Assembly: GCA_053919585.1 (NCBI GenBank)
Contig: CM132788.1
DNA: 57,207 bases
Strand: one strand, 5' to 3'
From: Euprymna scolopes
Taxonomy: Eukaryota
The notes beneath the pieces were generated by a model, which was given only the letters and a program-made list of their open reading frames with translations, searched no databases and was not told the DNA's origin. This document shows, piece by piece, positions 23,101-27,236 of the stretch (the first letter of the stretch is position 1; each line of letters opens with the position of its first letter). The translations under genes and the position numbers were made by a program.

Positions 23101-24021
23101 GACACTGAAAAGCATGATGTATGCATAGAAAGAACTTCTAGCACAACTGAAAAGTTACAGCTACATAACACCCCATATATATATATATATATATCACAAT
23201 CATTGACACCAGATCACTGAAGTAAAACATTGAGCCTTACAAGTATCAGATGGGTATCCACTTGGGAAGACTAGGCACTGTATGTACCACGCCATGGAAA
23301 TTTCCAGTTGGTATCTGGAGGCACACTAATTCACTGGGAGGTGCACCCCCAGTCTTCAGTAAGACATGTATCTAGAAGGAAACTGATGTAAAAACCTGCG
23401 GTCTACTGTATACTCTGTCCTATGGTAGTCATCTGCACTGACAAAGGTTAGCAGTAATACAAAAAATTGGTTCTACACAAAGCCTTCACCATTATAAACA
23501 ATGGAGTGTGGATTTCCGAGCAACTTGTGACAGAAGCTCATACATCGAAATCAAATGGAAGAGTCCATCATATAGATGGACATGGTTTAAAGTACTAACC
23601 AACCATAAGCCACTAGTTATGATCGTACAAAAGCCATTGACGAATGCATCCCCTAAATTACAAATGACAAGATGCAAACAGTATATACTAGGACAGGAAA
23701 TGATTAGCTGATGCTCTAAGAAGCCACTCGAGCACTGAAAACGGTGGTGACAATAATTAATGATACAGACAAACAACCTGTGTGTCAAGTTTGAATCCAG
23801 GTTGTTTTTCAAACATTTACAGTTAGCCTTGATATTTCAACTACAAGGAAACATAACAGGATGAGGCTTAAGGAACTACCACAGGCAATATGGCCATATT
23901 GACTAAAGGGACGAATTGTATCAATGATTATGAAGGGAACAAGAATTATTCCAGAGATCCAACAAAAGTTCTTTTGACCAGCCATCAAGATGTTAAACCT
24001 TCAAACCAGAAATGTATACTA

Positions 24022-26426
24022 TACCTTTTCCAGTTCAAAATGGGATACTCCTGTTCAAAATAAATTTAAAATAAAAATTTCAATTTATAAATATCTTTGG
24101 TGCTACAAGATATTGATTTAAATTTTTTAGCCTAATGGTTAGGTCAACTGAAAGTCACGATAACAGAAGTACGAAAGCACACATCTTGGAGGTATACAAG
24201 ATGGAAATTGTAAAGCCATAGTGGAAAATCTATTCCAAAAACCACTGTCACTGGATTAGTAAGAGAAATCAACCTGATACAAGAGGGCCTAGAAATTGTA
24301 AGGTTAGACTGGTTCATACGGATTTTATTCGAGCACTAGTGGAGGAAAAATCCTAGGATCACATTAAATTGAAGCCCAGTTTGGGTTTAAATTGTCCAAA
24401 TCTACAGCAGCGAAGCATCTAGATATGATGACATGCTTAAAGCTGTAAGATTTGTGCCAGAGAGCAAATTCAATTGAGAATAAAAATAAACGTTTATTTT
24501 GTTCAAAATTATTGAATTACCAATTAACTGGGAACCCCATTTTATTTATGGATGAAACAAACTTTAATGTTCATATTTCCAGGAGAGATGAGCATTCTCT
24601 AAAGGGTAGGCAGTGTAACTTAGTTTCAGCCAGTACTCAGGGTGCCAATATTCACGTTATTGGATGTATCGGTCCTCATGGCCTCGTGTACCATGAAATT
24701 CAAAGAGGATCTTTTCAAAAAGAAAGTGCACAGTCTTGAATGCGAGAATGTTTGAGAGCTGCAAAGAGACAATATTAGGGTTCAGTTGTGATGGTTGTTG
24801 ACAGTGCCCCATGTCACTCAAACATGAAGTTTTTAGTGAAGAATTTCTAGGATGTGAAGTGCTTAGGTCGAGACCATACAGTCCAATGTTTAATCCTATT
24901 AAACAAGTGTGGTCTTTAATCAAAGCCTACGTCAAGCAGGAATTGGCTTCTAAATTGTGAGTATACTTGCAATGGAGAGAAGAGATGGTTTGTCAATTAC
25001 TGAACAAAGGGCAAGAGCTTTGACTTCATTGAAGAATTGGGAAGGGTTACACCAGAAGTTTGCAATCGTTTCATAGATGGGGGAAAAAAAAAAAAAATTC
25101 CTGCAGCTGTTGTATTAGAAGAGGTGTTCTAATAAATGACTTGAAAGTTTTTATTTTATAAAATGTAAATTTTATTGCTAAAATTTAAAATATTTTTCAT
25201 ATTTATACTAATATTCCCATTTTGAAATGAAACTATTCCCATTTTGAAATGAAACTATTCCCATTTTGAAATGAAACTATTCCCATTTTGAAATGAAACT
25301 ATTCCCATTTTGAAATGAAACTATTCCCATTTTGAAATGAAACTATTCCCATTTTGAAATGAAACTATTCCCATTTTGAAATGAAACTATTCCCATTTTG
25401 AAATGAAACTATTCCCATTTTGAAATGAAACTATTCCCATTTTGAAATGAAACTATTCCCATTTTGAAATGAAACTATTCCCATTTTGAAATGAAACTAT
25501 TCCCATTTTGAAATGAAACTATTCCCATTTTGAAATGAAACTATTCCCATTTTGAAATGAAACTATTCCCATTTTGAAATGAAACTATTCCCATTTTGAA
25601 ATGAAACTATTCCCATTTTGAAATGAAACTATTCCCATTTTGAAATGAAACTATTCCCATTTTGAAATGAAACTATTCCCATTTTGAAATGAAACTATTC
25701 CCATTTTGAAATGAAACTATTCCCATTTTGAAATGAAACTATTCCCATTTTGAAATGAAACTATTCCCATTTTGAAATGAAACTATTCCCATTTTGAAAT
25801 GAAACTATTCCCATTTTGAAATGAAACTATTCCCATTTTGAAATGAAACTATTCCCATTTTGAAATGAAACTATTCCCATTTTGAAATGAAACTATTCCC
25901 ATTTTGAAATGAAACTATTCCCATTTTGAAATGAAACTATTCCCATTTTGAAATGAAACTATTCCCATTTTGAAATGAAACTATTCCCATTTTGAAATGA
26001 AACTATTCCCATTTTGAAATGAAACTATTCCCATTTTGAAATGAAACTATTCCCATTTTGAAATGAAACTATTCCCATTTTGAAATGGAACTATTCCCAT
26101 TTTGAAATGGAACTATTCCCATTTTGAAATGGAACTATTCCCATTTTGAAATGGAACTATTCCCATTTTGAAATGGAACTATTCCCATTTTGAAATGGAA
26201 CTATTCCCATTTTGAAATGGAACTATTCCCATTTTGAAATGGAACTATTCCCATTTTGAAATGGAACTATTCCCATTTTGAAATGGAACTATTCCCATTT
26301 TGAAATGGAACTATTCCCATTTTGAAATGGAACTATTCCCATTTTGAAATGGAACTATTCCCATTTTGAAATGGAACTATTCCCATTTTGAAATGGAACT
26401 ATTCCCATTTTGAAATGGAACAGGTA
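24022..26426 (+). mobile_element. IS630/Tc1-like DDE transposon, decayed
   Basis: TIR TACCT(T/G)TTCCA(G/T)TTCAAAATGGGA with a TA TSD in a CTAG context. Motifs FMDETNFN, HVIGCIG, VVDSAPCHS, PYSPMFNPI..VWS (about 24136-25130). Confidence 0.85.
25212..26421. repeat. Tandem array of 55 x 22 bp TATTCCCATTTTGAAATG(A/G)AAC
   Basis: 1210 bp = 55 units exactly. 39 A-variant units (25212-26069), then 16 G-variant units (26070-26421). No spacers. Confidence 0.97.
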
Positions 26427-26580
26427 TAGAAGTGAAATAATGCCGATATTGAAAATATCAGCAAGAAATGTCTAATATGACAACCTTCCAGCACAAAACA
26501 TTAGCCATTTAATATCCACAACAGAACATGGTAAATTGTCAGACTTATTTAACAGCAATGACCATGAATACCTGATAATT

Positions 26581-27158
26581 GCCAAGGCTGCTGCAAAGAA
26601 GGTGAGCGCTCTACCGTGCTAGAAAGCTACTTACTCCTGAAACTATCCTGTACGTCTATAAGGTCACCATTTGCCCATGTATGGAGTACTGTTGACACAT
26701 TTGGGCTGGTGCATCTACTAGTCTCATTCCTGAACAGGGTTCAAAAAGTCACCAACCTGATGGGTCCTGAACTGTCATCTAAGCTTCAGCCTGTCCCATC
26801 GACGAAATGTTGCATCCCTCTGCCTGTTCTACAAGTATTTTAAATGTTGAATGCTCTGCCAAACTACAAGCACTTGTACCTCTTCAATGTAAATACCTCC
26901 AACAAACAGCTAAATCCCACCCCTACACTGCAGAAATCCCTAGATGTAAGAAATCCTACTCCAATAGTTTCTTCCCCAGAACTGCTAGACTTTGGAACTC
27001 CTTTCCGGGATTCTGCTTTCCCAGCTGTACTGACATGCAGAAGTTCAAGTGTAATGTGAACAGACATCTTGTTAATCTCCCTTCATAATATCCCTGCAGC
27101 TTCTGTCCCCAATAGAACCCTACTTCAAAGTGGAAGTAGGCCTTGTTTAAGCTGAAAA
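26581..27158 (+). mobile_element. 5'-truncated CR1-clade LINE 3' end
   Basis: PCMEYC.HIWAGA, RRNVASL, HPY, SFFPRTARLWNS.P, FKCNVNRHL, then a short A tail. Confidence 0.8.
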
Positions 27159-27236
27159 AATTTAATTCAAAATTTTTTTAAGTAAAAAATTGCCGATTAG
27201 AAGTTTCCCAAGTATATGGAAAATAACTGACGCGAC

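What the first reader, a model, noticed from the sequence alone, without database searches (positions are those of the whole stretch)
24022..26426. Minisatellite born from a transposon TIR: 55 x 22-bp expansion of the right end of an IS630/Tc1-like element
Seen: the reverse complement of the repeat unit matches the motif in the left TIR (TTCCAGTTCAAAATGGGATAC), where it occurs only about 1.5 times. On the right it is amplified to exactly 55 copies and runs straight into the terminal AGGTA|TA. The transposase is heavily decayed, yet the array is perfectly homogeneous apart from one variant. Known: TIR and subterminal repeats of Tc1/mariner elements are transposase-binding sites, and some satellites derive from TE ends. 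Inference: a recent expansion long after the element died, possibly a nascent satellite, a transposase-binding decoy array or a small-RNA source. The unit is partly palindromic (CCATTT-TG-AAATGG), which could promote slippage.
Basis: partly seen in the sequence, partly recalled or inferred. Interest (0 to 1): 0.75.

Follow-up and report, generated by a model that had tools for sequence, protein, structure and literature searches.

The report
Transposon-end repeat grown into a minisatellite
A long-dead jumping gene whose ends are naturally built from a few 21-base repeats has, at this one locus, recently grown its right end into 55 perfect 22-base copies; other copies of the family did the same independently, so this is a clean but ordinary case of tandem repeats arising from transposon ends.

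Summary
Window 25212-26421 is a gap-free 22-bp x 55.0 array: 39 units ending GAAAC, then 16 ending GGAAC. It runs into the terminus AGGTA and a TA duplication, inside a decayed IS630/Tc1-like (Pfam DDE_3) element at 24022-26426.

The interpretation needs correcting. The array was not born from a motif present about 1.5 times. This family's inverted ends are natively short tandem arrays of a 21-bp unit, typically 2.5-3.6 units per end. In 29 other genomic copies, 13 of 35 detected ends hold 6 or more units and 3 hold 40 or more; an extra fetched array reaches 82. Expanded copies are scattered over a star-like tree, and most amplified unit variants are high in one array only. I therefore read the growth as independent and in place.

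The window array stands out in three ways:
- It has a 22-bp register that occurs as tandem copies nowhere else in the 5.9-Gb assembly.
- It has no private substitutions, against about 85 expected at the element's 7% divergence.
- Its unit is hairpin-prone as single-stranded DNA.

An intact sister family in the same genome also has ends built from about 7 tandem 20-21-bp units.

No evidence supports a decoy or small-RNA role. Read-level support could not be obtained. Verdict: real, well explained, a known kind.

The parts
24020..24021 (.). left TA target-site duplication (preceded by C)
   Evidence: Read directly from the sequence. Family-wide the 5' flank is C-TA in 16 of 27 copies.
24022..26426 (+). 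whole decayed IS630/Tc1-like (DDE_3) DNA transposon copy, 2405 bp; canonical copies are about 1306-1360 bp
   Evidence: The termini TACCTTTTCC... and ...GGAACAGGTA match the termini of 29 other copies. The internal part has at least 44 genomic matches at 79-86% identity.
24022..24066 (+). 5' inverted end: a 9-bp terminus plus one good and one degenerate 21-bp unit (about 1.5 units)
   Evidence: Inverted repeat with 26403-26429, 93% complementary. Other copies carry 2.5 or more units at this end.
24135..25132 (+). remains of the transposase gene (from ATGGTTAGG... to the ...EEVF stop), with frameshifts and at least 6 stops
   Evidence: tblastn of open pieces from other copies onto the window shows frame changes and stops. 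Window pieces score 25.6 and 23.6 bits to Pfam DDE_3. A better preserved copy (L009) scores 46.6 bits against a cut-off of 28.6.
25133..25211 (+). AT-rich 3' non-coding segment that precedes the end repeats in all copies
   Evidence: Aligns with the same segment in L018, L021, L023 and L069.
25212..26069 (+). 39 identical 22-bp units TATTCCCATTTTGAAATGAAAC
   Evidence: Tandem dimers of this variant occur only at this locus in the genome.
26070..26421 (+). 16 identical 22-bp units TATTCCCATTTTGAAATGGAAC, hairpin-prone as single-stranded DNA
   Evidence: Unique to this locus. Six units fold at -25.5 kcal/mol, z = -5.5.
26405..26426 (+). 3' terminus CCATTTTGAAATGGAACAGGTA; the family form is CCATTTTGAACTGGAAAAGGTA
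26427..26428 (.). right TA target-site duplication (followed by G)
   Evidence: Read directly. Family-wide the 3' flank is TA-G in 20 of 26 copies.

Best explanation
The element is one copy of an old, extinct IS630/Tc1-like DNA transposon family. A canonical copy is compact, about 1.3 kb, and inserts with a TA duplication. Its inverted ends are not single sequences. They are short tandem arrays of a 21-bp unit, most likely repeated transposase-binding sites two helical turns apart (inferred).

After the family's single burst of transposition, these built-in arrays behaved as length-unstable minisatellites at individual insertion sites. They grew and shrank by replication slippage and/or unequal sister-chromatid exchange, independently at either end.

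At this locus a 22-bp register arose. The likeliest route is a tandem duplication between two GAAC microhomologies, one of them created by a private A-to-C change in the terminal GGAAAAGGTA (inferred). That unit replaced the original 21-bp units and expanded to 55 copies very recently. One G/A substitution was itself amplified, which gave the 39 + 16 block structure.

The near-palindromic core lets adjacent units pair as single-stranded DNA, which may have favoured slippage (inferred, weak). No transposase is needed, and no function is implied.
For: Shown:
- Array anatomy and uniqueness of the 22-bp register.
- 21-bp tandem units at both ends of nearly all of 29 other copies, from 2.4 to 72 units. 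Further arrays of 48, 55 and 82 units.
- A star-like tree of internal regions (pairwise K2P 0.08-0.15), with expanded copies scattered rather than forming a clade.
- Of 19 amplified variant unit types, 8 occur in a single array and most others are high in one array only. Mean identity is 0.903 within arrays and 0.873 between arrays.
- The window's internal region is 7.0% (K2P) from the family majority, which predicts about 85 substitutions over 1210 bp. The array has 0 private variants. Other large arrays have 1-12 private variants and 0-26 shared ones.
- No intact transposase of this family appears among the top genomic matches.
- A young intact sister family (377-aa ORF, DDE_3 at 62.5 bits) has 135-nt inverted ends built from about 7 tandem 20-21-bp units. 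Its pattern hits usually come in pairs, one on each strand, about 1498 bp apart. Tandem-unit ends are therefore the design of this clade, and the unit number is stable while copies are young.
- The window's units are hairpin-prone as single-stranded DNA, while the 21-bp arrays tested (L067, L069) are not.
Against: - Reads spanning the array could not be examined, so the exact count of 55 rests on the assembly.
- The hairpin idea rests on one locus. The less hairpin-prone GAAAC unit is the more numerous (39 against 16), and non-palindromic 21-bp arrays grew even longer.
- The order of events (GGAAC founder, then GAAAC) is inferred from the terminal sequence only. The opposite order is possible.
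- One amplified variant (GAATTG) is shared by two long arrays, L021 and L067. Some expansion before transposition therefore cannot be excluded for other copies.
- That the 21-bp unit binds transposase is untested.
Confidence: 0.8

Rival explanations
1. Assembly artefact: the true locus has only a few units, or a very different number, and the assembler inflated or mis-sized a perfect repeat.
For: The array is perfectly homogeneous, which is the hardest case for assemblers. No second haplotype contig exists for comparison.
Against: - A 1.2-kb array is far shorter than modern long reads.
- The ordered two-block structure (39 then 16) is not what a collapse or expansion error usually gives.
- Nine other arrays of 13-82 units, with ordinary accumulated mutations, exist at ends of the same family. 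Long arrays at these ends are therefore real biology in this genome.
Confidence: 0.06
2. The long array was already present in a transposition-competent master copy and arrived with the insertion, so it is a native long end rather than in-place growth.
For: All family members carry tandem units at their ends. Two long 5' arrays (L021, L067) share an amplified variant unit.
Against: - The 22-bp register exists at this locus only.
- The array has 0 private substitutions while the rest of the same copy is 7% diverged.
- Expanded copies do not cluster on the tree.
- The young intact sister family mostly shows one perfect unit dimer per end, at a constant end-to-end spacing.
Confidence: 0.04
3. The array is functional: a transposase-binding decoy, a small-RNA or hairpin-RNA source, or a regulatory or chromatin element kept homogeneous by selection.
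For: - The units are probably derived from transposase-binding sites, since both this family and the intact sister family show the tandem-unit end design.
- Adjacent GGAAC units can pair into 14-bp stems.
- There are weak miRNA-model hits.
- A living, distantly related transposase (32% identity) exists in the genome.
Against: - It is a single locus, 1.2 kb long, lying between other repeats.
- The Rfam hits are far below threshold (29 against 56 bits).
- The sister family's units and termini differ in sequence.
- Similar arrays at other copies are visibly decaying (79-96% matches), which is the signature of neutral DNA.
- No expression data could be obtained.
Confidence: 0.05

Closest known systems
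Tetris foldback transposon and its TIR-220 satellite in Drosophila virilis (PMC4079207)
   Same: The inverted ends natively contain internal tandem repeats in variable number. The same repeats are found expanded into longer arrays, which arose inside element copies.
   Different: Tetris is non-autonomous and foldback-like, with about 220-bp units and kb-size satellite arrays in beta-heterochromatin. Here the element is a compact transposase-coding IS630/Tc1-like family with 21-22-bp units. Arrays reach at most about 1.7 kb and stay attached to element ends. The 22-bp variant is confined to one locus.
Galileo / Foldback elements with long inverted ends holding multiple transposase-binding sites (PMC3688188)
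   Same: The repeated units inside the ends are, or are likely to be, multiple binding sites for the element's own transposase.
   Different: Galileo is a P-superfamily element with a THAP domain and ends hundreds of bp long. Binding was shown experimentally there and is only inferred here.
Xenopus TIR- or MITE-derived tandem repeats (Xstir from Xmix; the Tc1/mariner MITE miDNA4), as listed in PMC9659126 and PMC12628747
   Same: Tandem repeats are linked to ends or interiors of class II elements, including Tc1/mariner derivatives, with variable monomer number.
   Different: Those are abundant dispersed families or satellites. miDNA4 is proposed to have captured a pre-existing repeat. Here the repeat is the element's own end unit, and each expansion is local.
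Intact DD35E IS630/Tc1-like family of the same genome (L071; probably the family noted in s1-272138 and s1-295807)
   Same: DDE_3 transposase with 35 residues between the second D and the E. A CCTTTT-type terminus. Inverted ends built of tandem 20-21-bp units.
   Different: Only 32-33% protein identity and a different unit sequence. It has about 7 units per end with little length variation and an intact 377-aa ORF. It is a sister family, not the same one.
Traveler (DD35E/TR) family of Tc1/mariner (PMC7093834)
   Same: The same 35-residue spacing in the catalytic triad, a TA duplication and a size of about 1.5 kb.
   Different: Traveler has short ends of 13-68 bp finishing in CAGTC or CAGCC, and is reported from vertebrates only. 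This family ends in TACC...GGTA and has tandem-unit ends. Membership was not tested by phylogeny.

Membership tests
IS630/Tc1/mariner superfamily DNA transposon | DDE/D transposase of the DDE_3 / Tc1 type | tested here: met
   Pfam DDE_3 scores 46.6 bits (cut-off 28.6) on an open piece of copy L009. The window's own pieces score 25.6 and 23.6 bits, in two frames. tblastn maps them in order along the element.
IS630/Tc1/mariner superfamily DNA transposon | TA target-site duplication | tested here: met
   TA lies on both sides in the window. The 5' flank ends in TA in 20 of 27 copies and the 3' flank begins with TA in 25 of 26. No empty site was available for direct proof.
IS630/Tc1/mariner superfamily DNA transposon | terminal inverted repeats | tested here: met
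   27 nt, 93% complementary, in the window. Conserved termini in 29 copies.
IS630/Tc1/mariner superfamily DNA transposon | N-terminal paired-like helix-turn-helix DNA-binding domain | tested here: inconclusive
   Only sub-threshold hits on pieces of other copies: HTH_32 22 bits, HTH_Tnp_Tc3_2 20 bits, HTH_Tnp_IS630 15 bits.
Traveler (DD35E/TR) family | 35 residues between the second D and the E, plus monophyly with TR and CAGTC/CAGCC termini | tested here: not met
   The 35-residue spacing can be read in the L009 and L008 pieces and in L071. The termini, however, are TACC...GGTA, not CAGTC (PMC7093834). No phylogeny was made.
Transposon-end-derived tandem repeat (minisatellite/satellite born from a TE) | monomer homologous to a defined part of the parent element | tested here: met
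   The unit is the family's 21-bp end unit plus 1 nt, and is the reverse complement of the left end.
Transposon-end-derived tandem repeat (minisatellite/satellite born from a TE) | copy number well above that of the canonical element, arisen in place | tested here: met
   55 units against a median of 3.6 at 3' ends. The register is locus-specific. There are no private substitutions. Expanded copies are scattered on the tree.
Satellite DNA proper | long arrays at several loci, free of the parent element, forming a genomic repeat family | tested here: not met
   The 22-bp variant is at one locus only. The 21-bp arrays fetched are at most about 1.7 kb and still carry an element terminus. Perfect 21-bp dimers occur at only about 20 places.
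Hypervariable minisatellite (VNTR) | length polymorphism among individuals | not testable with these tools
Foldback-type element | very long inverted ends made of tandem repeats that form most of the element | tested here: not met
   Canonical copies are about 1.3 kb with ends of about 60-85 bp. Long ends are secondary and usually one-sided.

The most novel reading that the evidence does not exclude
The tandem-unit ends of this DD35E clade may be more than passively unstable. They could be actively destabilised, or used. The living sister-family transposase might still nick or bind the dead family's units and so drive repair-linked expansions. Alternatively, the hairpin-forming 22-bp array might be transcribed into small RNAs that act on the clade. 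Either way this locus would be a young transposase decoy or silencing trigger rather than neutral DNA.
Probability: 0.05. Interest if true: 0.6.

Novelty: new member of a known kind. Interest (0 to 1): 0.3.

Why it matters
This locus gives a clear, datable view of how a minisatellite grows from a transposon end. The progenitor state (2.5-3.6 units), many independent intermediate states (6-82 units, 79-96% homogeneous) and a very young state (55 perfect units) all sit in one genome. A living sister family shows the unexpanded design.

It also shows that elements whose ends are tandem binding-site-like units seed length-unstable loci wherever they insert. That matters for repeat annotation, for marker development in this large, repeat-rich genome, and for reading 'satellite birth' claims. 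It does not change what is known about the origin of tandem repeats from transposable elements.

Tried and rejected
- **Reads.** Neither the assembly check nor small-RNA or expression mapping was possible.
- **Empty site.** A 31-nt pattern joining the two flanks, with up to 3 mismatches, found nothing. The immediate flanks are unique (about 440 bp on the left, 157 bp on the right) and lie between other repeats. There is no paralogous empty site and no alternative haplotig.
- **Genome letters.** Only five arrays and one sister-family copy were fetched afterwards. The other array sites listed were not inspected.
- **My own error, corrected.** Loci from the genome search are not re-oriented, so alignment A1 compared the window's 5' end with 3' ends of minus-strand copies. 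All end counts were redone on oriented copies.
- **Rfam.** Only sub-threshold mir-890 hits inside the GGAAC block. Rejected as chance hairpin resemblance.
- **Palindrome as the cause.** Kept only as a weak contributor, because 21-bp arrays that do not fold grew longer.
- **Large protein searches.** Not used. Pfam already placed the transposase, and the claim does not rest on the absence of relatives.
- **Majority rule.** A majority rule over aligned copies was used only inside scripts to measure divergence.

Full report
**What is there.** TRF reports one strong array in the finding's range: 25212-26421, period 22, 55.0 copies, 99% matches, no indels, score 2308. Cut in phase, it is 39 identical units TATTCCCATTTTGAAATGAAAC followed by 16 identical units TATTCCCATTTTGAAATGGAAC. 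There are no other differences. The array runs into AGGTA and then TA. The ends 24019-24045 and 26403-26429 are a 27-nt inverted repeat, 93% complementary. The left end holds one good and one degenerate copy of the reverse-complemented unit. The element spans 24022-26426 with TA on both sides. The only correction is that 'one variant' is really a two-block structure.

**The element.** Between the ends lie the remains of a transposase gene.
- Pieces match Pfam DDE_3 at 25.6 and 23.6 bits, in different frames.
- tblastn with open pieces from other copies shows frame changes and at least 6 stops.
- A better preserved copy (L009) passes the DDE_3 cut-off at 46.6 bits against 28.6.
- In the better copies I count 35 residues between the second D and the E (pieces printed).

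The window lies in a 5.9-Gb assembly of 925 contigs. Earlier notes of this scan call it a squid, cephalopod or mollusc genome, which I did not verify. The internal 1190 bp has at least 44 scored matches out of 132 candidates, at 79-86% identity. No intact copy of this family was seen.

**The family's ends are natively tandem.** TRF on 29 other copies, each with 1.5-kb flanks, finds a 21-bp unit in tandem at the ends of nearly all of them. Consensus forms are CATTTTGAACTGAACTATTCC and ...GAAATGAAC.... The loci are not re-oriented by the tool, so I re-oriented them by the strands given and recounted.
- 5' ends hold 2.4-72.3 units and 3' ends 2.5-25.5 units. The 3' median is 3.6. The commonest values at both ends are 2.5-3.6.
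- 13 of 35 detected ends have 6 or more units, 7 have 12 or more and 3 have 40 or more.

Perfect 21-bp dimers occur at about 20 further places. I fetched four of them:
- a full copy with 48 units at its 5' end (L067);
- a solo end with 55 units (L068);
- a 5'-truncated copy with 82 units at its 3' end (L069);
- a segmentally duplicated array (L070).

A canonical copy is 1306-1360 bp. It reads: TA, then TACCTTTTC, then (21 bp)n, 5' leader, transposase, an AT-rich segment, (21 bp)n, GGAAAAGGTA, then TA. The starting material was already a short tandem array, and the window's left end is merely about one unit shorter than usual.

**Growth happened in place, repeatedly, after insertion.**
- A maximum-likelihood tree of 31 internal regions is star-like, with pairwise K2P of 0.08-0.15 and a mean of 0.113. 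Copies with long arrays are scattered over it. For example L011 (25 units) pairs with L002, which has no expansion.
- Amplified variant units are largely array-specific. Of 19 variant types present three or more times in some array, 8 occur in one array only, and most others are high in one array and single elsewhere.
- Mean unit identity is 0.903 within arrays and 0.873 between arrays.
- Arrays span a range of decay, from 79% to 96% TRF matches. They carry 1-12 private variant states and 0-26 shared ones. This is as expected if expansions happened at different times and then aged.

**What is special about the window's array.**
1. *Register.* The unit is 22 bp, not 21. Tandem dimers of either 22-bp variant occur only at this locus in the whole assembly (38 and 15 hits, all here; controls 0).
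2. *Age.* The internal part of this copy is 7.0% (K2P) from the family majority, against 4.1-8.2% for other copies. A 1210-bp stretch of the same age should then carry about 85 substitutions. The array has none that is private to a unit. With zero observed, the last homogenisation lies within roughly the last 3-4% of the copy's lifetime (my arithmetic: 3/1210 per site against 0.07).
3. *Folding.* As single-stranded DNA, six GGAAC units fold at -25.5 kcal/mol (z = -5.5) through 14-bp stems between neighbouring units. Six GAAAC units fold at -14.1 kcal/mol (z = -2.7). The 21-bp arrays of L067 and L069 do not fold better than shuffles.

The origin of the 22-bp register can be inferred from the terminus. 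The family terminus is ...GAACTGGAAAAGGTA, and the window has ...GAAATGGAACAGGTA. The private A-to-C change creates a second GAAC exactly 22 bp after the GAAC of the preceding unit. A tandem duplication between these microhomologies gives the GGAAC unit. A later G-to-A change, itself amplified, gives the GAAAC block. This order is an inference and the reverse is possible.

**A living relative with the same design.** A search with a catalytic piece also found a second family at 32-33% identity, with dozens of uninterrupted 378-codon frames. One copy (L071) has these features:
- a 377-aa ORF, with DDE_3 at 62.5 bits and HTH_32 at 28.6 bits, below its 33.7-bit cut-off;
- 35 residues between the second D and the E (read);
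- 135-nt inverted ends made of about 7 tandem 20-21-bp units, with a CCTTTT-type terminus.

A perfect dimer of its unit occurs 394 times in the genome. In the listed part the hits usually come in pairs, one on each strand, about 1498 bp apart, and rarely more than two hits stand in a row. Tandem-unit ends are therefore the native architecture of this clade, and the unit number is stable while copies are young. This supports two ideas, without proving either. The units may be functional parts of the ends, most plausibly repeated transposase-binding sites about two helical turns apart. Long arrays may be a by-product of time since insertion.

**Mechanism, with status.**
- Shown: the array derives from the end unit, is locus-specific and is far younger than the copy. 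The family is dead, and the same kind of growth occurred independently at many copies and at both ends.
- Inferred: growth was by replication slippage and/or unequal sister-chromatid exchange without transposase. The 22-bp register arose by microhomology. Hairpins contributed.
- The hairpin contribution is weak, because the less foldable unit is the more numerous and non-folding 21-bp arrays reached 82 units.

**Rivals.**
The ordered two-block structure, and nine other arrays of 13-82 units at ends of the same family, make it unlikely.
- *Arrival with the insertion.* Contradicted by the uniqueness of the register, the lack of divergence and the tree.
- *A functional role (decoy, small RNA).* There is no support. 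The only hits are sub-threshold mir-890 matches at 29 bits against a gathering score of 56. It is a single locus between other repeats, and sister arrays are visibly decaying.

**Comparison with what is known.** Reviews list inverted ends and other repetitive parts of transposable elements as common sources of tandem repeats (PMC9659126, PMC12628747).
- The closest described case is Tetris in Drosophila virilis, whose ends contain internal tandem repeats that also form longer arrays (PMC4079207).
- Galileo has multiple transposase-binding sites in repeated parts of its long ends (PMC3688188).
- The present case differs in superfamily (IS630/Tc1-like), in unit size (21-22 bp) and in scale (at most 1.7 kb, attached to element ends). 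It is not a satellite family.
- It is not Traveler, the named DD35E family, whose ends finish in CAGTC or CAGCC (PMC7093834).
- Earlier notes of this scan report several other single-locus arrays grown from dead transposons in this same genome. Unrelated arrays of 22-38 units (periods 23-26 bp) lie in the flanks of 4 of the 29 loci fetched here (L002, L003, L015, L028). Minisatellite growth therefore seems common in this genome.

**Verdict.** A real and well-resolved example of a known process. Interest is modest. The family-level picture (native tandem-unit ends, recurrent independent expansions, a living sister family with the same design) is the more useful result.

Noticed in passing
L071:810-2427 (G000:C2:37409409-37411026): An intact IS630/Tc1-like element of a different family. 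It has a 377-aa ORF on the minus strand (980-2113), DDE_3 at 62.5 bits, DD35E spacing and 135-nt inverted ends built from about 7 tandem 20-21-bp units. Its unit dimer occurs 394 times in the genome, usually as pairs of hits about 1498 bp apart, which suggests roughly 200 very uniform and possibly active copies. It is probably the family noted in s1-272138 and s1-295807.
   Followed up: partly
ends of L002-L030 and window 24019-24021 / 26427-26429: The family's insertions sit in C-TA...TA-G far more often than chance (C-TA in 16 of 27 copies, TA-G in 20 of 26). This suggests a preference for the palindromic target CTAG beyond the usual TA.
   Followed up: partly
L070:1700-2760 (G000:C19:117261199-117262259): An end array of 9-12 units, together with about 500 bp of flanking DNA, is itself duplicated in tandem with a period of about 740 bp. 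This is a higher-order repeat that includes the element terminus.
   Followed up: no
L002:215-814, L003:3413-4047, L015:1-959, L028:313-1123: Unrelated minisatellites (26 bp x 22, 23/46 bp x 27/14, 25 bp x 38, 26 bp x 31) lie within 1.5 kb of four of the 29 fetched copies. This hints that minisatellite arrays are very frequent in this genome.
   Followed up: no
window 26578-27200 and 23300-23578: Both sides of the insertion are bordered, after 157 bp and about 440 bp of unique sequence, by very abundant repeats (13011 and 5384 first-look candidates, at 81-88% identity). The right one contains a LINE-like reading frame fragment.
   Followed up: no
window 26090-26426: Sub-threshold Rfam mir-890 matches (28-29 bits against a gathering score of 56) tile the GGAAC block. 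They reflect the 14-bp inter-unit stems and are not a real miRNA family match.
   Followed up: yes
window, many sites (e.g. 2288, 9708, 13507, 14067, 27237, 28019, 39676, 50329): At least 17 pure or nearly pure A or T runs of 25-43 nt occur in 57 kb. These are presumably tails of retroposed elements.
   Followed up: no
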